Source of the DNA: Isurus oxyrinchus
Taxonomy: Eukaryota
Assembly (NCBI GenBank): GCA_026770705.1
Contig: JANJGN010000150.1
Location: 744,001 to 808,000, forward strand
Length of the DNA: 64,000 nt
Reading direction: 5' to 3'
Shown: one piece after another, positions 7,507-48,748 of the stretch
How the letters are laid out: each line of letters starts with the position of its first letter
Position numbering within the stretch: the first letter of the stretch is position 1
Program-made: the position numbers and the translations under genes
The notes under the pieces: model-generated
What the model saw: only the letters and a program-made list of their open reading frames with translations
Database searches by the model: none
Told to the model about the DNA's origin: nothing

Positions 7507-7909
7507 ATAGGAACCACTGCCTTAGACACTGAGGATCTAGGACAGCTAGGCCAATTCATGATTCATGATGGTGATAATGGGGGAATTCTGAAGGCTCCTA
7601 ATCCATTGTCCAACGTTGTAAATCAGCAGTGAACTCACTTCAATTAGTGTGTCTTGTAGACACTGTGTTGGGTGGCAGACTGACTTCACTAAATAGGTAC
7701 CTGAGGGTCATGAGCCAATTTAGAATGAACTTGTCCACTCCTGTGTCCGGAATTCTCTTCAATCTGTTGTGAAACCTTGGGGCATTCATTGTGTGACCTG
7801 TGGATTATCCAGACTGCAGCCTGTGTGCCCCAGTGATGGAGGGGGTGGATATTGAGTCTAGTGGATTGAGAAAACATTCAGAGTTAAATATTGATATTTC
7901 TCTCCCTAG

Positions 7910-8284
7910 TTGGACTATCACAAGTGTGGAAAGGTGACACTCCAGGAGAGGTGACAGCGCAGGAAGGTTCGTGTGTACAGATTCCATGTAATTACAGTTA
8001 TCCATCATATTTAGTAGCGAGATCACCAGTCGGAATCTGGTATATGAGAAGGAATTGGGAAAAATGGAATGAACGGTCTATAGCCTTTCACTCCAAGGAT
8101 CATAATCGCGAGTTACCACAGTTCCACCATCGGACCCAGCTGTCTGGAGACCTGAAAGATGGCGACTGTTCCCTGATTATAAACAACATCAGACGGGAAG
8201 ATGCAGGATATTATTTATTCAGCCTAGAATTTGACAACAGGAATAGATACAACGACCGTCCTGAAACCCAGCTTCACGTTTCTG
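7910..8284 (+). CDS. locus B Siglec V-set exon V1 (essential Arg replaced by Ser)
   Basis: 375 nt, phase 1-1, intact AG/GT; DAGYYLFSLEF. Confidence 0.8.
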
Positions 8285-8559
8285 GTAAGTGCTGTGTTAT
8301 AATTACTCAACAATTCACATCCAACACTCAATGGGAAATAATAGTGTTTGATTTGCTTGTTTTTTGGCCGTGTTAACCAGCGCCACTATTTTTAATGATT
8401 TGTCTATTTCTGCTCCCAGATCCATAAGCTTATTGTGTGTGATTGAATCCACATCATAGCTGTAACATAAACCGAGCTGAGGGGTGATGACACCTGCCCC
8501 CTGAGTGAAGTATCTCCTCCCCACTACACCTTCCACCCCTCACACTGTCCGTGTAAACC

Positions 8560-11620: not shown

Positions 11621-11688
11621 TCTGTAAATTTTGAGTCTAGTGGATCCACAAGCCATCCAGAGATAAATATTGAGATTTCTCTCCCCAG

Positions 11689-12057
11689 TTGGACTGTCAC
11701 AAGAGTGGAAAGGTGACACTCCACGAGAGGTGACAGCTCAGGAAGGTTCCTGTGTACAGATTCCATGTCATTACAGTTATCCATCGTGTCTGGAAAACCA
11801 ACCGCGAGGTGGACTCTGGTTTAATAATGAGAAACAGATTCCCTGGGCTCCCATTGCCTTTCACTCCAAGGATCACAGTCACGAGTTACCACGGTTCCGC
11901 CATCGGACCCGGCTGTCTGGAGACCTGAAAGATGGCGACTGTTCCCTGATTATAAACAACATCAGACGGGAAGATGCAGGACCTTATTTTTTCAGAATAG
12001 AATTTGACAATGGTCCGAGACATAACTATTACCCTGTAACCCAGCTTCACGTTTCTG
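11689..12057 (+). CDS. locus B Siglec V-set exon V2
   Basis: 369 nt, phase 1-1, intact AG/GT; DAGPYFFRIEF. Confidence 0.8.
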
Positions 12058-13970
12058 GTAAGTGCTGTGTTATAATTACTCAACAATTCACATCCAACAC
12101 TCAATGGGAAATAACACAATCTGTGACGTTTACATATTAACACAAAACACAGGTTATTATAACACACTGTCTGATTCTCAATAACCTGGTGATAGCTTCC
12201 AGTTCAGTCCTAAAACAACCTCTAATACTCACTTTAATATCAATAATTAAATGTGTTGACTGTGTCTATCAATGTTATCAGTTTATCCACTCCCATCAAT
12301 CTCTCAAATCCTGTCTCGAAGTCTGACATATCGACAGAAGAAAGATTTACATTTCTACAGCGCCTTTCACCACCCTAGAGTTCCTACCCTAAATCTCTCC
12401 CTCTCTCTCTCTCTCTGTCTCTTTATCTCTGTCTCTCCATAACACCGACCTCTTCTGGTCAGCTGTCGCTAATATCTCCACATGTGTCTGGGTGACATAC
12501 TTTGTTTTATGACGCTCCTGTGTAGCACCTTGGGGTGATTTGTCATGTTAAAGTTGTTGTGAAAATATAAGTTGTTGCCCTTTGACTCTCGACCCCAGAT
12601 CGAGTCTTATTTTAGAGGGAATGTACAACCTCCTTAGATTTCTGACCAAATGTCATTTGATTATTTTTATTGAGCGAATGCCAAGCCCCGATACCGAGCG
12701 AGAGCCTCCTCATTTGCCGAGTTTAGGGTGATGAGTCAGCACCTTAGTCTGTAGAGGGGATTCTCCTCGGTAATGAGCAGCCTTGTTTGTGTCTCTCCAC
12801 AAGCGCATGAGGGGTTTGTACAGAGGCTGCAGCGCTGGAGGGGGTCTGCACAGGGGTCCTGGCCTGTCCTGAGCCGGTTTTAGCAAGGACCACTCTGGCC
12901 TTGGCAGCTGAAAGCCAGCCATTGGACAGACGGGGCCTGTCACAAGGAGCCTGTTAGTCACTCCCCCCAGTGTCTCCTGTGCTCAGATCTAGACCATGTT
13001 GGCTGGTGGATCTGGCTCAGGAAGGGTCCTCCCCATGGGACCCCCAGATGGAAGGTGGGTCGAGCGGGTCAGTCACTTGCATGTTTATTCTGCGGCTTTA
13101 ATATTTTAAGATGGTAAGAATGTAGGAACATAAGAAACAGGGACAGGAGCAGGCCATTCGGCCCCTCGAGCATGCTCTCACTGATCTGGTTGTTGCCTTA
13201 ACTCCATTTTCCTGCCTGTCCCCCAAACCCTTGACTCCCTTGTCGATCAAAAACCTGCCTCACTCAGCCTTGAGTCTATTCAATGGCCCAGCCTCCACTG
13301 CTCTCTGGGGAAGAGAATTCCACAGGCTAGCGCCCCTCTGAGAGAGGAAATTCCTCCTCATCTCAGTCTTAAATGGGAGAGCACTCATTCCAAAACTGTG
13401 CTCCCTGGTTCTAGATTCCCCCACGAGGGGGAAACATCCTCCCAGCATCCACCCTGTCAAGCCCCCTTGGAATCGGATATGTTTCAGTAAGGTCAGCCCT
13501 CATTCTTCTAAACTCCAATGGATACAGGCCCAACCTGCTCAACATTTCCTCACAGGACAAACCCTTTAATCCCAGGAATCAGCCCAGTGTAGCTTCTCTG
13601 AACTGCCTGCACACAATGATCCTGTTAAAATCTCACTAACGCCCTGTGCAGCTGTTGCAAGACTTCCCTCCTTTTATACTCCATCCCTTTGCAATAAAGG
13701 CCAACATTCCACTTGCCTTCCTCATTCCATGGTTTTCCTGAATGCTGACTTTCTGTGATTCATGTACAAGGACACCCAGATCCCTCTGTACTGCATTCTG
13801 CAGCCTGTCTCCAGTTAAATAATATTCTGATTTTCTATTCTTCCTGCCAAAATAATTTGTTGCCATTCTCCTCAGTATTGACCATCCCCCAATTCAGCCT
13901 CATCTGTAAATTTTGAGTCTAGTGGATCCACAAGCCATCCAGAGATAAATATTGAGATTTCTCTCCCCAG

Positions 13971-14339
13971 TTGGACTGTCACAAGAGTGGAAAGGTGACA
14001 CTCCACGAGAGGTGACAGCTCAGGAAGGTTCCTGTGTACAGATTCCATGTCATTACAGTTATCCATCGTGTCTGGAAAACCAACCGCGAGGTGGACTCTG
14101 GTTTAATAATGAGAAACAGATTCCCTGGGCTCCCATTGCCTTTCACTCCAAGGATCACAGTCACGAGTTACCACGGTTCCACCATCGGATCCGGCTGTCT
14201 GGAGACCTGAAAGATGGCGACTGTTCCCTGATTATAAACAACATCAGACGGGAAGATGCAGGACCTTATTTTTTCAGAATAGAATTTGACAATGGTCCGA
14301 GCTATAACTATTACCCTGTAACCCAGCTTCACGTTTCTG
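13971..14339 (+). CDS. locus B Siglec V-set exon V3
   Basis: 369 nt, phase 1-1, intact AG/GT; 4 nt differ from V2. Confidence 0.8.
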
Positions 14340-14806
14340 GTAAGTGCTGTGTTATAATTACTCAACAATTCACATTCAACACTCAATGGGAAATAACACA
14401 AACTGTGATGTTTACATATTAACACAAAACACAGGTTATTATAACACACTGTCTGATTCTCAATAACCTGATGATAGCTTCCAGTTCAGTCCTAAAGCAA
14501 CCTCTAATACTTACTTTAATATCAATGATTAAATGTGTTGACTGTGTCTATCAATGTTATCAGTTTATCCACTCCCATCAATCTCTCAAATCCTGTCTTG
14601 AAGTCTGACATATCGACAGAAGAAAGATTTACATTTCTACAGCGCCTTTCACCACCCTAGAGTTCCCACCCTAAACCTCTCCCTCTCCCTCTTCCTCTCC
14701 CTATCTCTCTCTCTCTCGCTGTGTCTCTCTGTCTCTTTCTCTCTGTCTTTCCATAACACCGACCTCTTCTGGCCAGCTGTCACTAATATCTCCACATGTG
14801 TCACAG

Positions 14807-22175: not shown

Positions 22176-22479
22176 CACGTGAGGTGAATAGTGTCGATGT
22201 ATTTAAGGGGAAGCTGGATAAACACACGAGGGAGAAATGAATAGAAGGATATGGTGATGGGGTGAGATGGAGAAGGGGTGGGCGGAGACTCGTGTGGAGC
22301 AGAAACACCAGCATGGAGCAGATGGGCCGAATGGCTTCTTTCCCTGCTGTAAAACGCAGGTAAAGTTTCAGTTGGAATTACTGAACAGGGCCTGTGTGAA
22401 ATAGATTGCTAAGCAGTAGATAAGGAGGGGAGAGGCTGTGGCATGGTGCAGGATGACCTTGCGTGAATGAGGCCAGGGT

Positions 22480-22596
22480 CTAATATCTACAGCAGAGACC
22501 ACAAGTCTCATTTGGTCCTCTCCAATTACAGCAGTTACAGCAGAATCTGCAGAGCTGCTGTCTGCCCATTCTCTTCTGGCGCTGCAGCAAGGAGCC
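22480..22596 (-). CDS. HAMP: hepcidin exon 3: furin site RQKR + 8-Cys mature peptide
   Basis: Long polypyrimidine tract, ttttccAG|GGC; Cys spacing C-x2-CC-x-CC-x8-C-G-x-CC; TAG stop. Confidence 0.9.
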   Translation of the reverse strand, partial: GSLLQRQKRMGRQQLCRFCCNCCNWRGPNETCGLCCRY

Positions 22597-25500
22597 CTGG
22601 AAAAGCAGGAGGACAATAGGTGAGAACATTCCGGAAAGAAAGAAGGCATCATTTCAATCAGGCGCGTCATTGGAAGGAGGATGGCGCATTTCTCTAGCGC
22701 CTTTCCCCTCCTCAGGATGGCCCAAAGTGTTCCACAGCTGAAGGAAGGACTTTTTCTGAAGTGAGCTCACCGCTGTAATGTAGGAAACGCAGCAGGCAAT
22801 TCACGCACAGCAAGATCCCACAAACAGAAATGTGATAATGGCCCCGATTTTCAGTTTTTTACCAATGTCAGTTGAGGGATAAATGTTTGCCCCAGGAAAG
22901 TGGACATAACTCCACCCCATCCAGCCCCCATCACCCCCTCCACACATACCCCCCAACTCCTGACGCACTTCATTTAAATTGTGGCCATGGAATCCTCTAC
23001 ATCCATCTGAGAGGGCAGATGTTGTCTCAGTTTAACATCTCATCTGAAAGACAGCGCCTTCAACAGTGCAGCACCCCCTCAGTACTGACCCTCCGACTGT
23101 GCAGCACTCCCTCAGTACTGACCGTCTGACAATGCAGCACCCCCTCAGTACTGACCCTCCGACTGTGCAGTCCCCCGCTGGGACTGACCCTCTGACAGTG
23201 CAGCACTCCAAGACTGACCGTCTGACAATGCAGCACCCCCTCAGTACTGACCCTCCGACTGTCCTGCCCCCCCGCCGGTACTGACCCTCCGACAGCTCGG
23301 TAATTTCTCAATTACGCCTGGTGGTCCTTTTAACTCAGAGCTGAGAGTTGCAGAGAATCGAGCACACACCCTGAACTGACACTTGCAGTGCAAGTACTGG
23401 GAGCGCGCTGGTCATTATCATGCTGCTGTCTGTGGGATCTTACAGTGCGCCAATGGCTGATTCTTTTCCCACAGTACATCAGTGACCTCACATGAAAGAA
23501 AAAAAGCACTTGATTGTCTGCGAAACAGTTTTGGACGTCCTGATGTGTTGGAAGGCGCTAGAGAAATGCAAGAGTTGACGTTTCGAGTCCTCATGACCCT
23601 TCTGAGGACTCGAAACGTCAACTTTTTTCTTCTCCGCCGATGCTGCCAGACCTGCTGAGTTTTTTCAGGTAATTCTGTTTTTGTTTTGGATTTCCAGCAT
23701 CCGCAGTTTTCTTTGTTTTTATAGAGAAATGCAAGTCCTCTTTGTCTTTCACTCGATCCTCTAAGGTGTCTGTTGATTAACCAGCCTCTCGGTGTTTGAT
23801 GTAGGCCTGGTTATAAACAGGTAGAAGGATCAAATATCAAAAATGCTTTGGCTGACAGTCAAACCGATTGTGCATTCGGAGAGATTAGATACGGTCTGCG
23901 CACAATGACTCCAGTCTCTGGCACTGACTGCCGCCTGGGGTCTCCCTTCCACATAACACTCACAACTTGCATTTACACAGCGCCTCTGACATTGCAAAAT
24001 GTCCCAGCCCACATTACCGGAGCGTAAATCAGAGAGAAGTCTAACACTGAGTCACATATGGAGATATTAGGGATAGGTGACCAAAAGCTTGGTCAAAGAT
24101 GTCAGTTTTTAAGGAGCGTCTTAAAGGAGAGAGAGAGAGAGAGGCAGAGAGGTTAAGGGAGGGTATTCCGGAGCTCAGGGCCCCAGGCAGCTGAAGGCAC
24201 GGCCACCAATGGTAGAGCGATGGGAATCAGGGGGACCCGGGAGATGCAGTAATGTCAGAGATTTTGGAGGAACATCGGGACCGGAGGAGGTGTTCTCCTG
24301 CTCCATATCTCTCTCTCTCTTCCTCTCTTCCACTCCTCCTCTCCCTGTCTCTCTCTCTCCTACTCTTCCGCTCAATTGCCCTCTCTCCCAATCTTTCTCT
24401 CCTCTCTCCCTTTTCCTGTCTCTCTCCCTCTCTCTCCCCTGTCTCCTTCTCCCACTCTGTATCTCTCCCTCTCTCTCACACTATTTTTGTACCTTTCGCT
24501 CACTCTGTAACTCTCCCTTTCCTGTTAATTTCTCTCTCTTGGACAATCTCTCTTCCCTTTTCACTTTCCCTCACTCTGCATCTCTTTAATTTCTCCCTCT
24601 GTCACTCTCTCCCACCTATTTTCTTTCCCTTTCACCCCTCCCCGTCCCACTCTCTGTCTCTCTCTTCCAATCCCTCCCTCCCCCATTCCATCCCTCTCTC
24701 CGACTCTCGACTCCCAGCCTCTCTTTAACCCACTCCCAGGCTGGATCAGTCTCCCTCTCACTATTCCCGGCGTGGGTTACATTTAAAATTCCTGTGGGGA
24801 TATGTTCACTTCCTTGGAATTGCCTCTTCCCAGCTTTGCAAAAAAAGTGGGGGGGGGGGCTCGATTTCAAACATGCCTCCTGAGTATAACCGAGACAGAC
24901 TGCCACTGAAATCAGCTTGAAATCAGAAAACTTTCTGTGGAAGAAACGAGCAGGGAGAAACCTTAAAATAAGGAATGAATTTCCACCTACCGTGTCCGGG
25001 GAATCCACAGATTTCTCAATCGTCGAAGAACCTAAAGCAGTGTCAACCTGCAAAAAGAAAGAATTTATCAGGGAGAAAGTGAGAGGAGGATTGAGGGAGA
25101 GGGAGAGAGAGAGAGAGAGGTACAGGAGAGAGAGGGGGAGGAGGACAGACTTGCATTTCTCTAACGCCTTTCACCACATCCCAAAGCATTTCACAGCCAC
25201 TGAAGGATGTTTTTGAAGTGCACTCACACTGTAGGAAATGTGGCAGCTGATTTGTGCACAGCAAGATCCCACAAATAGCAATGTGATCATGGCCTAGATC
25301 ATCTGTTTTTGGTGATGTTGGTTGAGGGATAAATATTGGTGCCAGGACACCGGGGAGAACACCCCCTGCTCTTCCTCCAAATAGTGGCTGTGGGATCTTT
25401 CACACCCGCCCGAGAGGGCAGACGGGGGACTCGGTTTAATGTCTCATTCAACATTGTTGTGCTCCCTCAGTACTAACCCTTTGACACTGCAGCACTCCCT

Positions 25501-26711
25501 TAGTATTAACCCTTCGATAGTGCTGCACTCCCTCAGTACTGTCCCTCCGTCAGTGCAGCTCTATTTCAGTACTAACACTTCGACACAGCAGCACTCCCTC
25601 AGTACTGACCTCCGACAGTATAGCACTCCCTCAGTACTGTCCCTCCAATAGTGCAACACTTCCACACTACTGACCCTCTGAGAGTGCAGCACTCCCTCAG
25701 CACGGAGTGTTGATCTACATTATGGGACTGAATTCCCTGGAGTGAGACTCAGACCAGTGATTTAGGTAGGGTTGTGGGGGCTGGAGGAGGTTACAGAGAT
25801 AGGGAGGGCTGTAGAGGCTGTAGGAGGTTACAGAGAAAGGGAGGGTTGTAAGGGCTGTAGGAAGTTACAGAGATAGGGAGGGTTGTAGAGGCTGTAGGAG
25901 GTTACAGAGATAGGGAGGGTTGTAGGGGCTGGAGGAGGTTACAGAAATAGGGAGGGCTGTAGAGGCTGTAGGAGTTTACAGAGATAGGGAGGGTTGTAAG
26001 GGCTGTAGGAAGTTACAGAGATAGGGAGGGTTGTAGAGGCTGTAGGAGGTTACAGAGATGGGGGAGTTGTGGGGGCTGGAGGAGGTTACAGAGGTAGGGA
26101 GGTGTGTAGGGGCTGTAGGAGGTTACAGAGATGGGGTGGTTGTGGGGGCTGGAGGAGGTTACAGATGTAGGGAGGGTTGTAGAGGCTGGAGGAGGTTACC
26201 AAAATAGACACTGCTGTAGGGGCCACAGTAGGTTACAGAGATAGGGAGAGTTATAGTGTGGAGAGGAGGTTATAGAGTTCAGGAGGATTGTAGGGGCTGG
26301 AGGAGGTTACAGTGATTGTGAGGGTTGTGGGGCCTGGAGGACTTTACAGAGATAGGGAGGGTTGTAGGGTCTGGAGCAGGTTACAGAGATAGGGAGGGTT
26401 GTAGGGACTGTAGGAGGTTACATAGATAGGGAGGGTTGTCGGGTCTGGAGGAGGTTACAGAGATAGGGAGGGTTATAGGGACTGGAGGAGGTTACAGAGA
26501 TAGGGAGGGTTGTAGAGACTGGAGGAGGTTACAGAGATAGGGAGGGTTGTAGAGACTGTAGGATGTTACAGAGATAGGGATTGTTGTAGGGGCTGGAGGA
26601 TGTTACAGAGATAGGGAGAGTTGTAGGGGCTGGAGGAGGTTACAGAGATAGGGAGAGCAGCAAAGTCAGAGTGAACAAGACAAGTCGCCATTTCATCTGG
26701 GAGCTTCCCAT
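22480..26711 (-). CDS. HAMP: hepcidin-like prepropeptide gene, 3 exons; exon 1 disrupted in this assembly (possible pseudogene)
   Basis: Exon 1 (26711/26696 to ~26655): MGSSQMKWRLVLFTLTLLL. Exon 2 (25047-24991): VDTALGSSTIEKSVDSPDT. Exon 3 (22596-22480): GSLLQRQKR-MGRQQLCRFCCNCCNWRGPNETCGLCCRY*. Three-exon layout with phase-0 introns. Confidence 0.8.
23573..23721. mobile_element. short Penelope-like/retroposon insertion with terminal hairpin and 14-bp target-site duplication
   Basis: TAGAGAAATGCAAG at 23559-23572 and 23722-23735; 21-bp perfect inverted repeat 23573-23593/23603-23623. Related copies at ~16490-16585 and 63655-63790. Confidence 0.65.
24991..25047 (-). CDS. HAMP: hepcidin exon 2 (acidic propeptide)
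   Basis: 57 nt, ttctttctttttgcAG| ... ACG|gtaggt, phase 0-0, in frame with exon 3. Confidence 0.7.
25765..26657 (+). repeat. ~37-bp minisatellite (ggaggaggttacagagatagggagggttgtaggggct)n
   Basis: About 24 tandem copies abutting hepcidin exon 1. Confidence 0.9.
26640..26711 (-). CDS. HAMP: hepcidin exon 1 (signal peptide), fused to a minisatellite with in-frame TAA at 26642-26640
   Basis: ATG AAA TGG CGA then a hydrophobic core, downstream of a TATA-like box; no phase-0 donor visible. Confidence 0.65.
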   Translation of the reverse strand: MGSSQMKWRLVLFTLTLLLSLSL

Positions 26712-26781
26712 CTCTGCCTGTCTCTTCTGATCTTCTGGCTCTGCTTTGATGCTTTGGTTTGTAACTAGAGGAGCTTCCTGC

Positions 26782-26930
26782 TCTTATACCTGAAACACTT
26801 GAAGGGGACAGCCGCGGGTGGGTAGCTGTGTGGTATCACACCCATTTCTGGATATTGCAGTGTCGATGTTCCCTGTCCCACTGGCCTGGGACCAGCAGTA
26901 AGGTCACTGGGACATTGACTGTCTGGCGCC
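26782..26930 (-). promoter_or_regulatory. putative hepcidin promoter: TATAAGA (26788-26782) and BMP/SMAD-response element GGCGCC with adjacent AGAC (26930-26921)
   Basis: Motifs seen directly. GGCGCC is the known BMP-RE core of mammalian HAMP promoters. Confidence 0.55.
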
Positions 26931-28629
26931 GAGAACTATCAGTCCCTCCGCAACGCCCTTCACCTTGTGCAAATATGTGTTCATATTGACGCAACACAAC
27001 ATAGCAAAAACATAGGGGCTGGTTCTTATGTCGGCAAATCAGGTGAACCGCACGCCCCCTAACCCCTTACTCCTCTCATTGCTCCTCCTTCCTGCCAGAC
27101 ACTTACTATTTTACAAATTGTGTGCGTTGCTTTTATTTCGGACCAGGGGCCTCGAGGGGGAACTGATTTACGCTGAGGTTTAGGGGTTAACAGCCATGTC
27201 ATGTGTTGATCGGTCAGTGTTTACCATGTGAAGACTGTCTGTCACCAGCTTTGTTAATGGTTTATCCAGGAACATTGAAGGGCATGAACGTTCTTGCTTT
27301 GTATGGAACAAGTTACCAACTGGGTTCAGTCATCGACTCAGACTCACATCAACATAAACTGGCTTCTGACAGGTAAGTTTCTATTACATGAGGGTAGGAG
27401 GAGGCCATTTGGCCCCTCGAGCCTGCTCCACCATTCAAAGAGTTCATGGCTGATCTGCAAACTAGCCCCATATGCCTTTGTCCCATCTCCTTTAATACCT
27501 TTGGATAACAAAAATCTATCAGTCTCACAGGTTTAAAATGAACAACTTGATCGTGCATCAGTTCCTGTTTGGGGAAGAGAGTTCCAAATTTCTCCCACCC
27601 TTTGTACTTCTGTCTGTCCCTCTCTGTCCTTTTATTTCATTCTTTCATGTGATGTGGACATCACTGCCTAGGCCAGCATTTATTGCCCAACCCTAATTGC
27701 CCTTGTTCAGAGGCCACTTTTTAAAAGTGAACCACATTGCTGAGGGTCTGGAGTCACATGTAGGCCAGACCAGGTAAGGACAGCAGATTTCCCTCCCTAA
27801 AGGGCATTTGTGACCAAATACAAGAATCAGCAATGGTTTCCTGGTCATCATCGGACTTTTAATTCCAGGATTTTATTGAATTCAACTTCCACCAACTGCT
27901 GTGGTGGGATTCTAACCAGGGTCCCAGGAGCATTACACTGGGTCTCTGCATTACTGGTCCAGTGAAAATACCATCAGGCCAACACCTCCCCACTCTTCCC
28001 TTCCACCATCTTTCACACTTGTTCTGTCTCTCTCTCACTCTCCTTCTCTCTTCTCCCTCTCTCAGTCTCTGTCTGTCTCTCAATCTCTCTATCGCTCTCT
28101 ATCTCCTGGAGGCTCTCTCTCTGACTGTCTCCCTCCCTATATCTGCAACCTCCTCTCTCTCTCCCTTTCCTCCAGCCCCTACAACCCTCCCTAAGGCAGC
28201 CTCCACCTGCCTTTACAATCCTCCCCATCTCTGTAACCACCTTCAACCCCTACACCCCTCCCTATATCTGTAACCACCTCCAACCCCCACAACCCTCCCC
28301 ATCTCTGTAACCACCTTCAACCCCTACACCCCTCCCTATACCTGTAACCTCCTCCAGCCCCTGTAACCCTCCCTATCTCTTGAAGGGTTCTCAAAATTCC
28401 CACATTTTCCATATCATCAACAAGGATATCACTTTTGCACCTTTAAACTGCTGAGTTAAGTGGAAAACCCTGCAGACAGGAGGCTGGGCCCATGAAGGCC
28501 CAAAACCAGTTGTCTGCTGCACTTTGTGACAAGCCCCGAATAAGTCCAAGGTCTAGAACCCAGGGAGTGGGAGCGATTCAGACGGCTCAGAAGTCGCAGG
28601 TGAAGCTGACACACACCACCACACCCTAC

Positions 28630-32034: not shown

Positions 32035-33195
32035 GTCCTCACAATCTCTATCTATCGCACTCTTCTGCTCTATCTCTCTCTCACACACACATTCTCTCTC
32101 TAACACTCACAATCTCTCTCTATCACACTCTTCTGCTCTATCTCTCTCTCTCTCACACTCACACATTCTCTCTCTAACACTCACTATCTCTCTCGATCAC
32201 ACTCTTCTGCTCTGTCTCTCACTCTCTCTCACACACATTCTCTCTCCAACACTCACAATCTCTATCTATCGCACTCTTCTGCTCTCTCTCTCTCTCTCTC
32301 ACACTCACATTCTCTCTCTAACACTCACAATCTCTCTCTATCGCACTCTTCTGCTCTATCTCTCTCTCTCACACACACACATTCTCTCTCTAACACTCAC
32401 AATCTCTCTCTATCGCACTCTTCTGCTCTATCTCTCTCTCTCTCACACACACACACATTCTCTCTCTAACACTCACAATCTCTCTCTATCACACTCCTCT
32501 GCTCTATCTCTCTCTCTCACACACACACATTCTCTCTCTAACACTCACAATCTCTCTCTATCACACTCTTCTGCTCTCTCTCTCTCTCACACACACACAC
32601 ATTCTCTCTCTAACACTCACAATCTCTCTCTATCACACTCCTGTGCTCTATCTCTCTCTCTCACACACACACATTCTCTCTCTAACACTCACAATCTCTC
32701 TCTATCGCACTCTTCTGCTCTCTCTCTCTCTCACACACACACATTCTCTTTCTAATACTCACAATCTCTCTCTATCACACTCTTCTGCTCTATCTCTCTC
32801 TCTCACACACACACATTCTCTCTCTAACACTCACAATCTCTCTCTATCGCACTCTTCTGCTCTATCTCTCTCTCTCACACACACACATTCTCTCTCTAAC
32901 ACTCACAATCTCTCTCTATCACACTCTTCTGCTCTATCTCTCTCTCTCTCACACACATTCTCTCTCTAACACTCACAATCTCTCTCTATCACACTCTTCT
33001 GCTCTATCTCTCTCTCTCTCACACACACATTCTCTCTCTAACACTCACAATCTCTCTCTATCACACTCTTCTGCTCTATCTCTCTCTCTCTCTCACACAC
33101 ACACATTCTCTCTCTAACAAACACAATCTCTCTCTATCACACTCTACTGCTCTCTCTCTCTCACAAACACAATCTCTCTCTATCGCACTCTACTG

Positions 33196-33226
<31 letters not shown>

Positions 33227-36200
33227 TCTCTCTCTAACACTCACAATCTCTCTCTGTCACACTCTTCTGCTCTCTCTCTCTCTCACACACACACATTCTC
33301 TCTCTAACACTCACAATCTCTCTCTATCACACTCTTCTGCTCTATCTCTCTCTCTCACACGCACACATTCTCTCGCTAACACTCACAATCTCTCTCTATC
33401 ACACTCCTCTGCTCTCTCTCTCTCTCTCACACACACACATTCTCTCTCTAACACTCACAATCTCTCTCTATCACACTCTTCTGCTCTATTTCTCTCTCTC
33501 TCTCACACACACATTCTCTCTCTAACACTCACAATCTCTCTCTATCGCACTCTACTGCTCTCTCTCTCTCTCACAAACACAATCTCTCTCTATCGCACTC
33601 TTCTGCTCTCTCTCTCTCTCACAAACACAATCTCTCTCTATCGCACTCTTCTGCTCTATCTCTCTCACACAAACACACATTCTCTCTCTAACACTCACAA
33701 TCTCTCTCTATCACACTCCTCTGCTCTATCTCTCTCTCTCACAAACACACATTCTCTCTCTAACACTCACAATCTCTCTCTATCGCACTCTTCTGCTCTA
33801 TCTCTCTCACACAAACACACATTCTCTCTCTAACACTCACAATCTCTCTCTATCACACTCCTCTGCTCTATCTCTCTCTCTCACACACACACATTCTCTC
33901 TCTAACACTCACAATCTCTCTCTATCACACTCCTCTGCTCTATCTCTCTCTCTCACACACACACATTCTCTCTCTAACACTCACAATCTCTCTCTATCGC
34001 ACTCTTCTGCTCTATCTCTCTCTCTCTCACACACACATTCTCTCTCTAACACTCACAATCTCTCTCTATCACACTCCTCTGCTCTATCTCTCTCTCTCAC
34101 ACACACACACATTCTCTCTCTAACAAACACAATCTCTCTCTATCACACTCCTCTGCTCTATCTCTCTCTCTCACACACACACACATTCTCTCTCTAACAC
34201 TCACAATCTCTCTCTATCACACTCCTCTGCTCTATCTCTCTCTCTCACACACACATTCTCTCTCTAACACTCACAATCTCTCTCTATCGCACTTTTCTGC
34301 TCTATCTCTCTCTCTCTCACACACACACATTCTCTCTCTAACACTCACAATCTCTATCACACTCTTCTGCTCTATCTCTCTCTCACACACACACATTCTC
34401 TCTCTAACACTCACAATCTCTCTCTATCACACTCTTCTGCTCTATCTCTCTCTCATACACACACATTCTCTCTCTAACACTCACAATCTCTCTCTATCAC
34501 ACTCCTCTGCTCTATCTCTCTCTCTCTCACACACACATTCTCTCTCTAACACTTTCAATCTCTCTCTATCGCACTCTTCTGCTCTCTCTCTCTCACAAAC
34601 ACACATTCTCTCTCTAACACTCACAATCTCTCTCTATCACACTCCTCTACTCTATCTCTCTCACTCACACACACACATTCTCTCTATCACACTCACAATC
34701 TCTCTCTATCGCACTCTTCTGCTCTATCTCTCTCTCTCTCACACACACATTCTCTCTCTACCACTCACAATCTCTCTCTATCACACTCCTCTGCTCTATC
34801 TCTCTCTCTCACACACACACACATTCTCTCTCTAACAAACACAATCTCTCTCTATCACACTCCTCTGCTCTATCTCTCTCTCTCACACACACACACATTC
34901 TCTCTCTAACACTCACAATCTCTCTCTATCACACTCCTCTGCTCTATCTCTCTCTCTCACACACACACACATTCTCTCTCTAACAAACACAATCTCTCTC
35001 TATCACACTCCTCTGCTCTATCTCTCTCTCTCACACACACATTCTCTCTCTAACACTCACAATCTCTCTCTATCACACTCTTCTGCTCTATCTCTCTCTC
35101 TCTCACACACACACATTCTCTCTCTAACACTCACAATCTCTCTCTATCACACTCTTCTGCTCTATCTCTCTCTCTCTCACACACACACATTCTCTCTCTA
35201 AAACTCACAATCTCTATCACACTCTTCTGCTCTATCTCTCTCTCACACACACACACATTCTCTCTCTAACAAACACAAACTCTCTCTATCGCACTCTTCT
35301 GCTCTCTCTCTCTCACAAACACACATTCTCTCTCTAACACTCACAATCTCTCTCTATCACACTCCTCTGCTCTATCTCTCTCTCTCACACACACACACAT
35401 TCTCTCTCTAACAAACACAATCTCTCTCTATCACACTCCTCTGCTCTATCTCTCTCTCTCACACACACATTCTCTCTCTAACACTCACAATCTCTCTCTA
35501 TCGCACTCTTCTGCTCTATCTCTCTCTCTCTCACACACACACATTCTCTCTCTAACACTCACAATCTCTCTCTATCACACTCTTCTGCTCTATCTCTCTC
35601 TCTCTCACACACACACATTCTCTCTCTAAAACTCACAATCTCTATCACACTCTTCTGCTCTATCTCTCTCTCACACACACACACATTCTCTCTCTAACAC
35701 TCACAATCTCTCTCTATCACACTCTTCTGCTCTATCTCTCTCTCTCTCACACACACACACATTCTCTCTCTAACAAACACAAACTCTCTCTATCGCACTC
35801 TTCTGCTCTCTCTCTCTCACAAACACACATTCTCTCTCTAACACTCACAATCTCTCTCTATCACACTCTTCTGCTCTATCTCTCTCTCACACACACACAC
35901 ATTCTCTCTCTGACACTCACAATCTCTCTCTATCGCACTCTTCTGCTCTCTCTCTCTCTCTCTCACACACACATTCTCTCTGTCTCCCTCCCTCAAATAC
36001 ATTGTCTCTCTCTCTCTGACACAAACACTCTCTCACACACTCACATACTTTCCCTAAAACTAACACAATCTCTCTTTCTGTCAAGCACACAATCTCTCTC
36101 ACACACACACACTCTCTCTCTCAGACACACACATTCTCTCTCTCTCAAACATTTAACATTTCTCTTCATCTCGATCTTCTGCTGTCTCCCTCTTTCTCTC

Positions 36201-38619: not shown

Positions 38620-39214
38620 CAGGTGGAGATTATTCCATCACACTCCTGACCTGTGCCTTGAGGTTGATGGACAGGCTTTGGGGAGTCAGGAGATGAGTTA
38701 CTCACCACAGGATTCCCAGCCTCTGGCCTGCTCTTGTAGTCACAGTGTTTATATGGCTAGTCCAGTTCAGTTTCTGGTCAACGTTAACCCCCAGCGTGTT
38801 GAGAGTGGGGGATTCAGCAATGGTGATGCCATTGGACATTAATGGGAGATGGATATATTCTCTCTGGTTGGAGATGGTCATTGCCTGGCACTTGTGTGGC
38901 ATGAATGTTACTTGCCACTTGTCAGGCCAAGCCTGGATATTGTCAAGGTCTTGCTGCATTTGGACATGGACTGCTTCAGCATCTGATGAGTCATGAATGA
39001 TGTTGAACGTTGTGCAATCATCAGCGACCTTCCATAATTCTGACCATCTGATAGAATGAATGTCATTGATGAAGCAGCTGAAGATGTTTGGGCCTAGGAC
39101 ACTACACTGAGCAACTCCTGCAGTGATATCCTGGAACTGAGATGACTGACCTCCAACAACCACAACCACCTTCCTTTGTACTTGGTATGAATCCAATGAG
39201 TGGAGAGTTTTCCC
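38620..39214 (-). mobile_element. LINE RT fragment
   Basis: VVVGGQSSQFQDITAGVAQCSVLGPNIFSCFIND..ADD..MQQDLDNIQAW. Confidence 0.85.
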
Positions 39215-40645: not shown

Positions 40646-43600
40646 CTACAGAGAAATGGAAACAGAAGACATCCTCACATCATTTACTGGCACTGATAGG
40701 GTTAAATTATTGTGCAGCCTCATTAGTGTCAGTCGTGTCTCAGTGGGTTTAAGCCTTTTTTCACTCTCTTTCTCTGTCTCTCTTTCTCTCTCGCTTTCTC
40801 TCTCTCTTTATAATTTAATCTCTATCACACTCCAACAGTGCAGCACTCCCTCAATACTGACCCTCTGACAGTGCAGCACTCCCTCAATACTGACCCTCTG
40901 ACAGTGCAGCACTCCCTCAATACTGACCCTCCGACAATGCAGTACTCCCTCAGTACTGACTCTCTGACAGTGCAGCACTCCCTCAGTACTGACCCTCCAA
41001 CAGTGCAGCACTCCCTCAATACTGACCCTCTGACAGTGCAGCACTCCCTCAATACTGACCCTCTGACAGTGCAGCACTCCCTCAGTACTGACCCTCTGAC
41101 AGTGCAGCACTCCCTCACTACTGACCCTCCGACAGTGCAGCACTCCCTCAGTACTGACTCTCTGACAGTGCAGCACTCCCTCAGTACTGACCCGCTGACA
41201 GTGCAGCACTTCCTCAGTACTGATCATCCGACAGTGCAGCACTCCCTCAGTACTGACCCTCCGACAGTGCAGCACTCCCTCAGTAATGACACTCTGACAG
41301 TGCACAACTCCCTCAGTACTGACCCTCCGACAGTGCAGCACTCCCTCAGTACTGACCCTCCGACAGTGCAGCACTCCCTCAGTACTGACACTCTGACATT
41401 GCAGCACTCCCTCAGTACTGACCCTCCGACAGTGTAGCACTCCCTCACTACTGACATCAGGTGCCTTGTCATTATTGTGTTCAGATTTCTGGTCAAAGAG
41501 CGAGTGATGGAGGGTGACAGCGGCTGGGAGCGAGAGACAGTGCTGACCACTGAGCCATTGCTTCACAGGGAGATATCTGTGTGTAACCCGGCTGGGAATC
41601 TGGGACACGTGTTGTCTACACACTGAGGTTGAAGCTTTGAAGTGAGTGTAAACAGCTCCTGTACCTGGTGCTTCACAGAGAGTGACCTGGGGTTCAATGC
41701 AATGTCACTGGTCCCTGAAACTCTCTCCTGCGTCGCTGTCTTTCTCCTGCAATAACACAATATCACACTGTGGTTATCATATAGCTGAGAGTCAGTGCAG
41801 CACAGACACAGAGACCACTGTAACCGTACAGCAACGGCTGGACTGTCTCTAGTTCCAATAAGGGGTATCAGCGTGACATCACTATAATGGAAGTGTGTCA
41901 TGTGATCCAATCTCAGTTTGACATTTGCTTTGAGCAGAGCACACACTCACAGCTCTGATGCCTTCAATCTTTCTCCATATGTATAACTGTTCTCGTGCCG
42001 AGTCTTGATAAACAAATCATTAACATTCTCACCAAATCCCCTATGAGTGATTGGTGTTTTCTGTCTTATACAGTAAATAAGCCTAAGGTATAATATCATT
42101 ATAATGACACGCCATATCTTTGACCCCCCCCTCCACCCCTGCTCTTCCCCCCATAGCCCTTCAAATGTTCCCCCTTCAAGTATTTATCCAATTCCCCTTT
42201 TGAAAGATCCTATTGAATCTGCTTCCACCGCCCTTTCAGGCAGCACCTTCCAGATCACAGCAACTGATTATTATTCATCTGGATAACGGGCAATGAAAAA
42301 CACTCTCTGGATCATAACGGATAAAGAGACCAGTTAGGGAGAGGCATCTGGCGCTTAACACAAGGGAAACAATCACCGACTTCAGGAAAGAACATTGAAG
42401 CAAATGTTTATATTAAAATCAAGTTAAATCTTCAGACTTACTTTCTCACACAGATGAAGATGAAGATTCCAGCCAGGAAAACACTCAACATGATCCCAGC
42501 CGTGAACAATCCTACTGTCCATTTACTGGAGTCTCTACCTGTAAAAACAGCCATTAATTACTGCACTACAGGTTTACAATGATGCTCCGATGTATCTCGA
42601 GAAGCGATACACTCACTCAGTGTTTAAATACTCATTCTCGGGCAATGCTGACATTTATTGTCCATCCCTAGTTTCCCCTTGAGAAGGTGGTGGGGGGTCT
42701 TCCTCCTGAACCACTGGTTTGTCCCAAACTGGGAGACCAGTTCAGAGGGCAGGTAAGAGTTAACCATGTTGGTGTCTGAGACTGGAGTCACATCCACATC
42801 GAGACATGCTTCCCTCCCTAAAGGGTATGTAGTCTCTACACATGTAACAACCAACCTCACTGAAATAATCGACTATCAGGTCATTATCACACGGTGGTTT
42901 GCGGGATCTTGCTGTGCACAAATCAGTACCTGTGTTTCCTACATTACAAAAGTGTGCTCACTTCGATAATGCTTCATTGGCTGTTGAATGTTTAGTAATT
43001 TCTAAGCAATTTATGAATACAAGTGTTGCATTTCAAAGTAATCCATGTAACATTTATATATATTTATCAATTAAAGAATGAGAAGTTCAGCAATTAAAAG
43101 GGTTGTTCAGGACAGTTAGAGAGAGAAAGGTCGTCAAGTATGGAGATTGGAAACGAAGACCTGACAGCCTTGTCCTCACAACCATTGAAGGAGAAACTGA
43201 GAGCAAAAACAGAAAGGGAGAGGAAAAATTGGGTGTGTGGATAACGTGGACTGAGCGAGGATTGAAGAAAACTGGATTAAAAACAACACGATCCCAATGG
43301 CTCCACGGAGACCACGGAGACAACAAACAAACAAATGTATCTCCACACTCACGTTCCACAGTGATGGTTATGAACCCATCCACTGCTCCATGTTCATTCT
43401 CTGCCACACACTGATAGTCTCCAGTGTCCCTGGATGTAACGTGAGGAATCACCAACCACAGCTCATTGTTGGAACTTGTTCTGTTCATTGGGACATTAAG
43501 ATGTCGCCACGTCAGGTTAGAAGCTGGGAAGCTCTCGACAGAGCAGATTATCATTGTAGAATTCCCCTCAATTATATTGATCGATGAAGCGTTAATCATA

Positions 43601-44323
43601 TCAAGAGAAGTAAATGAGAGATTCTGTGGAGCATCTAAGAACAAATCAAGTGTTTAAAAGTGAGCAAGCACAGTTTACAGCAAGACTCCATGCATCATCT
43701 CTCTGTATCTGATGTCTGTATGCATAGCCAGGTCCCTCCACTCCATATAACTTCCATTGTCAAATTTATAGTGGGCACTGCCTATGTAAACAGTCAAACT
43801 GCAGTTACATTCTCCCAACAGTAGAGGTGCTGTCCACCTAGAATGAAAGAAACTTTCACATCCTCAGGATATACCCAAGGGCTTGACAGGCAATGATTGT
43901 ATTTGATTGATGGAGCACTGAGGGCTAAATCTACAATCTCTGTTCAGGAGGTTGCTCATCCAATTCAGGGTCTTGTTGATCTGGAGTTTACCTTCCTTCA
44001 ACACAGAATCAGAGCTGATACCGAGACTCCAGTGCAGCACTGAGAGAGGACAGGGAACTCACACATGTGTTTGTGTTTGTGTGTTTTAGTATGTTTGTGT
44101 TTCTGCACAAGAGAGTATGTTTATGTGTGCGTGTGTGTATGTGTTTGTGCATGTGTGCGTGTGCCTGTTTGTATACATCTGTGCATGAGTGAGTGTGTGC
44201 ATGTGTATGTCTATGTGTGTGCACATGTGACTGTGTGTGTGAGTTGAGTGTGTGTGTGTTTCTGTGTATGTGTTTCAACATGCATCACTGTGTGTGTAAG
44301 TGTGCGTGTATGTGTCTACACAT

Positions 44324-47484: not shown

Positions 47485-48698
47485 TGTGTGTGTGTCTGTG
47501 TGTGTATGTCTGTGCTTGAGGGAGTGTGTGTGCATATGTGTGTCTATGTGTGCGCATGAATGATTGTATGTGTGAGTTGAGTTTGTGTGTGTTTCTGTGT
47601 ATGTGTTTGAACGTATGTTTGTGTGTAAGCGTGCATGTTTGTGTCTACACATGAGTATTTTTGCATGTGTGAGTATGTGTGTGTGTGAGTGATGTTGAAG
47701 TCTGTGTACACTCACATTCCACAGTGATGGTTATGAATCCCTCCACTGCTCCATGTTCATTCTCTGCCACACACTGATAGTCTCCAGTGTCCCTGGATGT
47801 AACGTGAGGAATCACCAACCACAGCTCATTGTAGCAACTTGTTCTGTTCATTGGGACATTAAGATGTCGCCACGTCAGGTTAGAAGCTGGGAAGCTTTTG
47901 ACAGAGCAGATTATCACTGCAGAATTCCCCTCAATTATATTGATCGATGAAGCATTAATCATTTCAAGAGAAGTAAATGAGAGATCCTGTGGTGAATCTA
48001 AGAACAAATCAAGTGTTTAATGTGAGCAAGTAAAGTGCACAGCAAGACTCCACGCATCATCTCTCTGTATCTGATGTCTGTATGCATTGGCAGGTACCGT
48101 CCCTCCATATAACTTCCACTGTCAAATTTATAATGGGCACTGCCTATGTAAACAGTCAAACTGCAGTTACATTCTCCCACCAGTAGAGGTGCTGTCCACC
48201 TAGAATGAAAGAAACTTTCACATCCTCAGGATTTTGCCAAGGGATTTACGGGAATGAATTGTATTTGATCGATGGAGCACTGAGGGGTAAATCTACAATT
48301 CTCTGTTCAGGAGGTTGCTCATCCAATTCAGGGTTTTGATGATCTGGAGTTTACCTTCCTACAACACAGAATCGGAGCTGATATCGAGACTCCAGTGCGG
48401 CACTGAGAGAGGAGCGGGACCTCACGTGTCTGTATGTTTGTGTTTGTGTTTCTGCAGATGTGAGTGTGTTTGTGTTGGTATGCACACATGTGTCTGTGTG
48501 TGCATGTGTGTATGTGTTTGCGCAAATGTGCATGTGTCTTTGTGTATATTTCTGTGCATAAGTGAATGTGTGTACATGTGTATGTGTATGTGTGGGCACG
48601 TGTGAGTGTGTGTGTGTGAGTTGACTGTGTGTATGTTTCTGTGTAGGTTTATGCACATGTATGACTGTGTGTAAATGTGCATGTATGTGCCCCCACAT

Positions 48699-48748
<50 letters not shown>

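What the first reader, a model, noticed from the sequence alone, without database searches (positions are those of the whole stretch)
22480..26930. Hidden hepcidin-like gene with an atypical 29-aa mature peptide (extended loop, glycosylation sequon, no DTHF/QSHL N-terminus)
Seen: not in the ORF track. Minus-strand 22596-22480 reads GSLLQ-RQKR-MGRQQLCRFCCNCCNWRGPNETCGLCCRY* behind a strong acceptor, with a 57-nt acidic propeptide exon and a signal-peptide exon upstream. Established: human hepcidin-25 ([25 protein letters not shown]) has Cys at 7,10,11,13,14,19,22,23 after a furin site, and its N-terminal residues (His3, Phe4) are needed for ferroportin regulation. Here the first five Cys sit at identical positions. 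The C5-C6 loop has 8 residues instead of 4 and contains an N-E-T sequon, and the N-terminus is MGRQQL with no His. Inference: a divergent, possibly antimicrobial or neofunctionalised hepcidin paralogue, comparable to teleost hamp2 but apparently in a cartilaginous fish.
Basis: partly seen in the sequence, partly recalled or inferred. Interest (0 to 1): 0.88.

Follow-up and report, generated by a model that had tools for sequence, protein, structure and literature searches.

The report
Shark hepcidin paralogue, damaged copy
This is a real shark gene of the hepcidin family (small cysteine-rich iron and defence peptides), but its "odd" long loop and sugar-attachment motif are the normal elasmobranch design, only its N-terminus is unusual, and this copy as assembled lacks the end of its first exon.

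Summary
Minus-strand exon 22596-22480 encodes GSLLQ-RQKR-MGRQQLCRFCCNCCNWRGPNETCGLCCRY*. It passes Pfam Hepcidin (31.2 bits, cut-off 27).

RNA-like contigs of the same species confirm exon 2 and intron 2 with an exact GT..AG joint. Exon depth there is several hundred times intron depth.

- **"Atypical" features:** mostly not atypical. RefSeq hepcidin-1 of the ray Mobula hypostoma (XP_062912710.1) also has a 29-aa mature peptide. It has the same eight Cys positions, the same 8-residue loop and an N-x-T sequon at the same place.
- **N-terminus:** this is what is special. It reads MGRQQL where the ray has MSHLSI. One RNA contig of this species reads RQKR-MSHLSICMYCC, so a canonical sibling exists. 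This is therefore a hamp2-like paralogue and probably not a ferroportin ligand.
- **This copy is damaged:** exon 1 runs into a 37-bp minisatellite and stops. Transcripts carry about 31 further exon-1 bases that are absent from the whole window. No in-frame donor remains. The cause is a real deletion or an assembly collapse.
- **Context:** the gene lies among Siglec genes.

The scan has already found sibling copies on other DNA of this genome. Novelty is modest.

The parts
22480..22596 (-). Exon 3 coding part: end of the propeptide (GSLLQ), the RQKR cleavage site, the 29-aa mature peptide and the stop codon
   Evidence: Translation. Pfam Hepcidin 31.2 bits against cut-off 27. Acceptor and frame. 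RNA joint at 22596.
22570..22581 (-). RQKR, a proprotein-convertase (furin-type) R-X-K/R-R site directly before the mature peptide
   Evidence: Read from the sequence. The same RQKR-M junction is present in Mobula hepcidin-1.
22483..22569 (-). Mature peptide MGRQQLCRFCCNCCNWRGPNETCGLCCRY: 8 Cys, 8-residue loop, NET sequon, pI 8.5, charge about +2.4
   Evidence: Alignment to Mobula hepcidin-1 and a frog hepcidin.
22350..22479 (-). 3'UTR, at least this far. The end is not mapped, and no AAUAAA/AUUAAA lies within 580 nt of the stop
   Evidence: X6 depth in bin 22350-22505 equals exon depth. Hexamer scan. Sequence.
22597..24990 (-). Intron 2 (GT..AG), full of SINE-like and simple repeats
   Evidence: Joint 22595/6 to 24990/1 in 9 contigs of X6. 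A second junction form in X6 (also seen in X17, organism B) carries C>T at 24992.
23652..23806 (-). Minor alternative cassette exon inside intron 2. It is 155 nt, out of frame, with a stop at its 10th codon (a non-productive isoform from an exonised repeat)
   Evidence: Joints 23805-24990 and 22595-23651 in X6. AG|..|GT sites and translation checked.
24991..25047 (-). Exon 2: 57 nt, phase 0/0, acidic propeptide VDTALGSSTIEKSVDSPDT
   Evidence: RNA joint and depth peak.
25763..26655 (.). 37-bp minisatellite, 24 copies. It abuts and overlaps the last bases of the retained part of exon 1. An 8-nt match (CTCTCCCT) links the exon end and the repeat unit
   Evidence: TRF. Junction sequence.
26650..26711 (-). 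Retained 5' part of the exon 1 coding sequence (62 nt, MGSSQMKWRLVLFTLTLLLSL..). The remaining 31 nt and the donor seen in transcripts are missing
   Evidence: Loose ends at 26650 (13 contigs) and at 25048 (9 contigs) carry the same 30 letters. Those letters are absent from the window at up to 3 mismatches.
26712..26788 (-). 5'UTR and core promoter with TATAAG at 26788-26783
   Evidence: X6 depth is high in bin 26718-26873 and at background in 26874-27000.
26921..26930 (-). GGCGCCAGAC, a candidate BMP/SMAD-responsive element 219 nt upstream of the ATG (inference only)
   Evidence: GGCGCC occurs only twice in the 64-kb window. That GGCGCC is the BMP-RE core of mammalian HAMP promoters is my own knowledge.

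Best explanation
This locus is one copy of an N-terminally diverged paralogue type of the elasmobranch hepcidin gene. It lies at the ancestral HAMP position among Siglec genes in a shark genome.

In intact sibling copies I infer an 88-aa prepropeptide: 31 aa from exon 1 (signal peptide), 19 aa from an acidic pro-exon, and 38 aa from exon 3. It would be secreted and cut after RQKR by a furin-type convertase. That releases a 29-aa cationic peptide held by four disulfides in the hepcidin hairpin. The hairpin tip is 4 residues longer than in tetrapods and carries N-x-T, as in other elasmobranch hepcidins.

The first six residues are MGRQQL instead of the conserved x-S-H-L-S-I. That is the segment which in human and teleost Hamp1 hepcidins engages ferroportin. 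So this type most likely no longer acts as the iron hormone. It more likely serves as an abundant host-defence peptide, like teleost Hamp2. A canonical sibling (MSHLSIC..) would keep the hormone role.

The copy in this window has lost the last 31 nt of exon 1 and its splice donor at a junction with an intron-1 minisatellite. As assembled it cannot make the prepropeptide. It is probably a dead copy.

Shown: family membership, exon 2/3 splicing, strong RNA signal of this peptide type, existence of a canonical sibling, and the exon-1 defect in the assembly. Inferred: secretion, cleavage, loss of ferroportin activity, an antimicrobial role, and that the defect is biological.
For: Family and design:
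- Pfam Hepcidin is above its cut-off.
- 57% identity over 37 aa to XP_062912710.1 hepcidin-1 of Mobula hypostoma, with no gaps, identical Cys spacing, loop length and sequon position.
- The closest solved structure is bass hepcidin 1S6W, sharing CRFCCNCC..PN-x-S/T..CG-x-CCR.

Expression and splicing:
- In X6, exon bins reach 1.5e5-5.9e5 against roughly 700-1,400 in repeat-free intron bins.
- Exact GT..AG joint for intron 2.
- The same splice form is present in a second species (X17).
- The long-loop coding part 22480-22566 has the same depth as the UTR.

Paralogue status: one X6 contig shares the exon-3 start through RQKR-M and then reads SHLSICMYCC. This matches the ray and frog N-termini.

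Functional analogy: synthetic sea bass Hamp1 (QSHLSL..) lowers ferroportin expression. The paper's title states that Hamp2 (HSSPGG..) does not regulate ferroportin (PMC5665920).

Exon-1 defect.

Locus: flanking V-set plus 'CD22-like first Ig' exons, nearest to white-shark Siglecs. In human, HAMP lies next to MAG and CD22 (own knowledge).
Against: - No functional data exist for any elasmobranch hepcidin.
- The peptide keeps L6, C7 and F9 and the exact 6-residue spacing before Cys7, so residual ferroportin binding is possible.
- A GGCGCC+AGAC motif in the promoter would fit iron/BMP regulation.
- The canonical sibling rests on a single contig in one run.
- Contig depths are summed over copies, so expression of this very copy is unproven. 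The deepest exon2-exon3 junction contig differs from the window at 24992.
- The exon-1 truncation sits at a minisatellite with 8-nt microhomology, exactly where assemblies can collapse.
- The tissue of run X6 is not known to me.
Confidence: 0.6

Rival explanations
1. The gene is intact in the animal. The abrupt passage from exon 1 into the minisatellite is an assembly collapse or misjoin, and this copy is one of the strongly expressed long-loop, His-less hepcidin genes.
For: The break lies exactly at an 8-nt match between the exon end and the repeat unit. It is next to a 24-copy minisatellite, a classic site of assembly error. Intron, promoter and exon contigs of X6 match the window at about 98-100% (table 8). 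Nine junction contigs match the window's exon2/exon3 sequence exactly.
Against: The missing 30 letters are nowhere in the window. Other copies in this genome are reported, in unchecked notes, to have different exon-1 donor defects, so decay of copies seems common. Near-identical siblings could supply all the matching RNA contigs.
Confidence: 0.25
2. The MGRQQL-type peptide is still an iron hormone: a ferroportin ligand with an altered N-terminus, perhaps tuned to shark ferroportin.
For: It has the same 29-aa scaffold as ray hepcidin-1 and conserved C7, F9 and C-terminal CGLCCR. There is a candidate BMP-responsive GGCGCCAGAC in the promoter. The RNA signal is very high, as expected for liver hepcidin.
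Against: The x-S-H-L-S-I motif is conserved in ray, frog and the shark sibling. Here it is replaced at 5 of 6 positions, including His3 and the hydrophobic residue 4. A canonical sibling exists in the same species. By analogy, the paper's title states that teleost Hamp2 does not regulate ferroportin (PMC5665920).
Confidence: 0.15
3. The hepcidin-like reading frame is a chance ORF in repeat-rich DNA and not a gene.
For: It is absent from the ORF track, and the region is packed with SINE-like and simple repeats.
Against: Pfam is above its curated cut-off. It is the only CC.CC peptide in six frames of 64 kb. There is gapless 57% identity to an annotated ray hepcidin. Spliced RNA contigs use exact GT..AG sites.
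Confidence: 0.01

Closest known systems
Hepcidin-1 of the ray Mobula hypostoma (RefSeq XP_062912710.1, 87 aa, automatic annotation)
   Same: RQKR-M junction. 29-aa mature peptide. Cys at 7, 10, 11, 13, 14, 23, 26, 27. 8-residue C5-C6 loop. N-x-T at positions 20-22. CGLCCR C-terminus. Pro-segment beginning VD and ending DT like the window's exon 2.
   Different: The ray peptide starts MSHLSIC (canonical). The window's starts MGRQQLC. Loop residues other than N20 and T22 all differ. Overall 16 of 29 mature residues are identical.
Teleost Hamp2-type hepcidins (sea bass Hamp2 HSSPGGCRFCCNCCPNMSGCGVCCRF; hybrid bass hepcidin, PDB 1S6W)
   Same: Non-canonical N-terminus beside a canonical sibling gene in the same species. 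Identical CRFCCNCC core, P-N-x-S/T in the loop, and CG-x-CCR-aromatic end. By analogy, host-defence rather than ferroportin regulation (PMC5665920).
   Different: Loop of 5 rather than 8 residues. Hamp2 is a teleost lineage. The shark duplication is probably independent, because the two shark types still share the exon-3 start. No function has been tested in sharks.
Human hepcidin-25 (HAMP)
   Same: Three-exon gene with the mature peptide in exon 3. Furin-type site. First five Cys at identical positions. Location beside Siglec genes (MAG and CD22 in human, own knowledge).
   Different: Human has a 4-residue loop, no sequon and a DTHFPI N-terminus needed for ferroportin binding. It is a single-copy gene.

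Membership tests
Hepcidin (Pfam PF06446, HAMP/LEAP-1) | Match to the family profile above the curated threshold | tested here: met
   31.2 bits against 27, E 2.7e-7, residues 5-37 on profile positions 24-52 of 53. That is 33 residues on 29 positions, so the loop carries a 4-residue insertion.
Hepcidin (Pfam PF06446, HAMP/LEAP-1) | Eight cysteines in the pattern C-x2-CC-x-CC-xn-C-x2-CC | tested here: met
   Cys at 7, 10, 11, 13, 14, 23, 26, 27. n = 8, as in ray hepcidin-1. n is 4 in frog and human and 5 in sea bass.
Hepcidin (Pfam PF06446, HAMP/LEAP-1) | Proprotein-convertase site R-X-K/R-R directly before the mature peptide | tested here: met
   RQKR|M, identical in Mobula hepcidin-1.
Hepcidin (Pfam PF06446, HAMP/LEAP-1) | Three-exon gene: signal-peptide exon, pro-exon, mature-peptide exon, all joined in frame | tested here: not met
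   Exons 2 and 3 and intron 2 are confirmed by RNA joints. Exon 1 in this window lacks its last 31 nt and its donor, and the only GT is in phase 2. The family design is met by the transcripts but not by this copy as assembled.
Hepcidin (Pfam PF06446, HAMP/LEAP-1) | Conserved neighbourhood with MAG/CD22-type Siglec genes | tested here: met
   V-set plus Ig_CD22 exons at 7891-8376, 11670-12140 and 13952-14422. Ig exons at 43087-43644 and 48422-49066. Shark Siglec relatives. The human gene order is my own knowledge. USF2 was not looked for.
Hepcidin (Pfam PF06446, HAMP/LEAP-1) | Beta-hairpin fold with four disulfides | tested here: inconclusive
   Single-sequence AlphaFold2 gave a helical model with pLDDT 71 and pTM 0.36. 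That is unreliable for an unaligned disulfide-rich peptide, so no fold search was run.
Iron-regulatory (ferroportin-binding) hepcidins: tetrapod hepcidin-25, teleost Hamp1 | N-terminal x-[ST]-H-[FL]-[PS]-[IL]-C motif | tested here: not met
   MGRQQLC here. Compare MSHLSIC (ray, shark sibling contig), FSHLSIC (frog), QSHLSLC (sea bass Hamp1) and DTHFPIC (human).
Iron-regulatory (ferroportin-binding) hepcidins: tetrapod hepcidin-25, teleost Hamp1 | Causes ferroportin internalisation or lowers serum iron | not testable with these tools
   Needs a synthetic peptide and a cell or animal assay.
Teleost Hamp2-type (antimicrobial) hepcidins | Membership of the teleost hamp2 clade | not tested
   No tree was built because only two outside sequences were retrievable. 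The shared exon-3 start with the canonical shark sibling argues for an independent, elasmobranch-side duplication. It may work like Hamp2 without being a member.
Teleost Hamp2-type (antimicrobial) hepcidins | Direct antimicrobial activity | not testable with these tools
   Needs MIC assays.

The most novel reading that the evidence does not exclude
Elasmobranchs independently evolved a two-type hepcidin system. One type is a canonical MSHLSI iron hormone. The other is a multi-copy, very highly expressed, N-terminally rewritten type that was amplified together with Siglec genes. In addition, the N-x-T in the elongated hairpin tip is really N-glycosylated, which would make these the first glycosylated hepcidins. 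That motif provides the only two loop residues conserved between ray hepcidin-1 and this shark paralogue.
Probability: 0.25. Interest if true: 0.6.

Novelty: new member of a known kind. Interest (0 to 1): 0.33.

Why it matters
Hepcidin is the master iron hormone of vertebrates, and almost nothing has been published on it in cartilaginous fish, the sister group of all other jawed vertebrates.

The useful results here are corrective:
- The 29-aa, long-loop, sequon-bearing design is the elasmobranch norm and is already in RefSeq for a ray. It is not a curiosity of this gene.
- Sharks appear to have both a canonical hepcidin and a His-less hepcidin, which parallels the teleost Hamp1/Hamp2 split.

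If the split holds, it gives an independent natural experiment on how a hormone scaffold is re-used for defence. The conserved N-x-T also poses a simple testable question about glycosylation.

For genome annotation, these small three-exon genes are being missed, and several copies, this one included, look damaged.

Tried and rejected
**Blank or uninformative searches**
- Word-indexed protein search with the exon-3 ORF alone found no candidate. It worked only after a short canonical fragment was added to the query.
- phmmer of the 38-aa exon-3 peptide against 1.8 billion representatives gave 0 hits at E <= 0.001. That is uninformative for so short a query.
- ESM Atlas gave no meaningful neighbour: best score 0.76, an unnamed plant cluster.
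- Single-sequence AlphaFold2 gave a helical model with pTM 0.36. I judged it unreliable and ran no fold search.
- The search of earlier findings by sequence was blank.

**Literature**
- Seven full-text searches found no paper describing an elasmobranch hepcidin sequence.
- One paper mentions hepcidin among the nurse-shark proteins that lack a whale-shark orthologue (PMC9207270). Its held supplement does not contain the word.
- Two hepcidin/fish antimicrobial-peptide reviews do not mention sharks.

**Ideas considered and rejected**
- The alternative ATG at 26691 (MATCLVHSDFAALPIS) is in phase with the 26643 donor and exon 2. It has no signal-peptide character and lies behind two out-of-frame ATGs, so I take it for coincidence.
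- The loop as a recent internal tandem duplication: the two 12-nt halves share no positions.
- Other hepcidin exons or the missing exon-1 tail elsewhere in the window: none.

- The joined three-exon model was not submitted to any search or fold tool. All searches were exon by exon, by reference.


Full report
**What is in the sequence**

On the minus strand, 22596..22480 translates as GSLLQRQKRMGRQQLCRFCCNCCNWRGPNETCGLCCRY-stop. It follows a pyrimidine-rich acceptor, TTGTCCTCCTGCTTTTCCAG|G.
- It is the only CC.CC-containing peptide in the six-frame translation of the whole 64-kb window.
- BLAST of its exons finds no other copy or remnant in the window.
- Pfam's Hepcidin model (PF06446) matches at 31.2 bits against a curated cut-off of 27, E 2.7e-7.
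- After cleavage at RQKR the peptide would be 29 aa. Cys are at 7, 10, 11, 13, 14, 23, 26, 27, the C5-C6 loop has 8 residues, N20-E21-T22 forms a sequon, pI is 8.5 and net charge about +2.4.

**Gene model and RNA evidence**

Exon 2 is 25047..24991. It is 57 nt, open only in phase 0, and encodes VDTALGSSTIEKSVDSPDT with charge -3.3. Its splice sites are TTTCTTTTTGCAG|G and ACG|GTAGGT.

I laid contigs of four public runs on 22350-27000.
- Run X6 is the same species as the best DNA holders and is labelled only 'RNA?'. It behaves as RNA. Bins containing exon 3 and the UTR, exon 2, and exon 1 with the 5'UTR reach 1.5e5-5.9e5. Repeat-free intron bins sit at roughly 700-1,400.
- Nine contigs join 24991 to 22596 with GT..AG ends.
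- A second junction form has a C>T change at 24992, making the last exon-2 codon ATG instead of ACG. It is carried by one contig of higher depth.
- A joint at the same coordinates is listed for run X17 of a related species.
- The depth falls to background above about 26874. That fits a start site about 30 nt below the TATAAG at 26788.

So this kind of gene is spliced and strongly transcribed. Contig depths are summed over near-identical copies, so they do not prove that this particular copy is expressed.

**Exon 1 is broken in this window**

ATG 26711 opens MGSSQMKWRLVLFTLTLLLSL, a good signal-peptide start.
- At 26650 the sequence passes into a 37-bp minisatellite (25763-26655, 24 copies).
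- The frame ends at TAA after 23 codons.
- The only nearby GT (26643) is in phase 2, and exon 2 has stops in the two other frames.

In X6, 13 contigs that match exon 1 down to 26650 continue with 30 letters that do not fit the window. Nine contigs that match exon 2 up to 25048 are preceded by the same 30 letters (table 7). Those letters occur nowhere in the window, even with 3 mismatches.

Reading the 62 retained nt, the 30 letters and the G at 25048 together gives a 93-nt, phase-0 exon 1: MGSSQMKWRLVLFTLTLLLSLQLSHFFSLSR. This is what a hepcidin first exon should look like. It would make an 88-aa precursor, close to the 87 aa of the ray protein below.

The end of the retained exon (CTCTCCCT) is identical to the end of the minisatellite unit. 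So either a microhomology-mediated deletion removed the exon tail, the donor and the start of intron 1, or the assembler collapsed the region. Another first-stage note on this stretch (s1-863692) saw the same break.

**What the 'atypical' features really are**

The first protein searches were blank.

One X6 contig shares the start of exon 3 through RQKR-M and then diverges. The divergent letters translate as SHLSICMYCC, a canonical hepcidin N-terminus. I added this 20-aa fragment to the exon-3 reference (alignment A1) so that the word-indexed search had more seeds. That search returned two annotated proteins:
- hepcidin-1 of the ray Mobula hypostoma, XP_062912710.1
- a frog hepcidin-like protein from Hyla sarda

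The ray precursor ends ..VLLRQKR|MSHLSICVFCCNCCQKQLKNRTCGLCCRL. Compared with the window's peptide it has:
- the same RQKR-M junction and the same 29-aa length
- Cys at the same eight positions and the same 8-residue loop
- an N-R-T sequon exactly where the window has N-E-T

The alignment is gapless with 57% identity. The frog sequence shows the 4-residue loop typical of tetrapods. Sea bass Hamp1 and Hamp2 have 5.

The long loop, the sequon and the 29-aa length are thus the ordinary elasmobranch hepcidin design, shared by a ray and a shark and already present in RefSeq. Within the loop, only N20 and T22 are conserved between the ray protein and this shark peptide. That is a hint, no more, that the sequon matters.

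**What is special**

The N-terminal hexapeptide is what differs.
- Ray: MSHLSI
- Shark sibling contig: MSHLSI
- Frog: FSHLSI
- Sea bass Hamp1: QSHLSL
- Human: DTHFPI
- This window: MGRQQL, with His3 and the hydrophobic residue 4 replaced

From established work on human hepcidin (my own knowledge), this segment inserts into ferroportin and is required for activity. In sea bass, the paper's title states that the canonical Hamp1, but not Hamp2, regulates ferroportin. Synthetic Hamp1 lowered ferroportin expression, and the two injected peptides are printed as QSHLSL.. and HSSPGG.. (PMC5665920).

The window's core (CRFCCNCC ... PN-x-T ... CGLCCR-aromatic) is closest among solved structures to bass Hamp2-type hepcidin, PDB 1S6W.

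The best reading is a hamp2-like, probably host-defence, paralogue that coexists with a canonical hormone gene. The two shark types still share the exon-3 start and diverge sharply from the first mature residues onward. That suggests the duplication is on the elasmobranch side and that the mature peptide has diverged faster than the pro-region. This rests on one contig.

**Context and taxon**

The gene lies between Siglec-type genes.
- V-set plus 'CD22-like first Ig' exons are at 7891-8376, 11670-12140 and 13952-14422 on the plus strand.
- Ig exons are at 43087-43644 and 48422-49066 on the minus strand.
- The first V-set exon's best named relatives are Carcharodon carcharias Siglec-13, Siglec-14 and CD33-like at 69-73% identity. 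Catsharks follow at about 60%.

In human, HAMP lies beside MAG and CD22 (own knowledge), so this is the ancestral HAMP neighbourhood.

The scan's earlier notes are AI notes that I could not check, because they lie on other DNA. They report further copies on this scaffold about 127 kb and 391 kb away and on other pieces. Some are said to be intact and expressed, and two are said to have a changed base at the exon-1 donor. One note says shark hepcidins are already in public databases. I confirmed that for a ray.

**Promoter**

- A TATAAG lies 77 nt upstream of the ATG.
- A C/EBP-like TTGCACAA is at 26972.
- GGCGCCAGAC is at 26930-26921. GGCGCC occurs only twice in the 64 kb.

GGCGCC is the core of the BMP-responsive elements of mammalian HAMP promoters (own knowledge). 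I record this as a weak lead. If it were real, it would argue for iron and BMP control even of this paralogue type.

**Limits and procedure**

- The three exons were never joined for any search or fold. All searches were exon by exon, by reference.
- Short strings printed by tools were typed in three places: the 30 loose-end letters, and the 20-aa fragment.
- The N run at 52713-52857 was left alone.

**Verdict**

This is a real hepcidin-family gene copy in a shark. Its loop, sequon and length are standard for elasmobranchs. Its N-terminus marks a diverged, probably non-hormonal paralogue. The copy in this window is defective as assembled.

Novelty is modest: a new member of a known family, already met several times by this scan on other DNA of the same genome.

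Noticed in passing
window 23652-23806 (minus strand): RNA-like contigs show a minor isoform that includes a 155-nt cassette exon inside intron 2. It derives from a highly repeated element, is out of frame and has a stop at its 10th codon, so it is a non-productive 'poison' exon.
   Followed up: partly
window 26921-26930 and 26965-26972 (minus strand): GGCGCCAGAC (GGCGCC occurs only twice in 64 kb) and a C/EBP-like TTGCACAA lie 213-261 nt upstream of the hepcidin ATG. They may be BMP/SMAD and liver-type promoter elements.
   Followed up: partly
window 24992: The deepest exon2-exon3 junction contig in run X6 carries C>T here (last pro-exon codon Thr to Met). A joint at the same coordinates is listed for a related species. 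It marks a sibling copy or allele that may be the main expressed one.
   Followed up: no
window 32038-35981: A 4-kb satellite of a 72-bp unit (about 55 copies, 88% matches), rich in CT/CA, lies between the hepcidin gene and the downstream Siglec gene.
   Followed up: no
window 7891-8376, 11670-12140, 13952-14422 (plus strand): Three intact V-set exons of the Siglec (CD22-like first Ig) type lie in a row. The last two give nearly identical Pfam matches, suggesting a recent duplication.
   Followed up: no
window 38702-39196 (minus strand): A reverse-transcriptase fragment (RVT_1, E 3.9e-5), probably a LINE remnant.
   Followed up: no
window 23063-23295 and 25462-25700: Two arrays of a 33-bp unit (..CAGTACTGACCCTCCGACAGTGCAGCAC..) lie in introns 2 and 1. 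They have enormous contig depth in all four runs of both species, so this is a very abundant shark repeat family.
   Followed up: no
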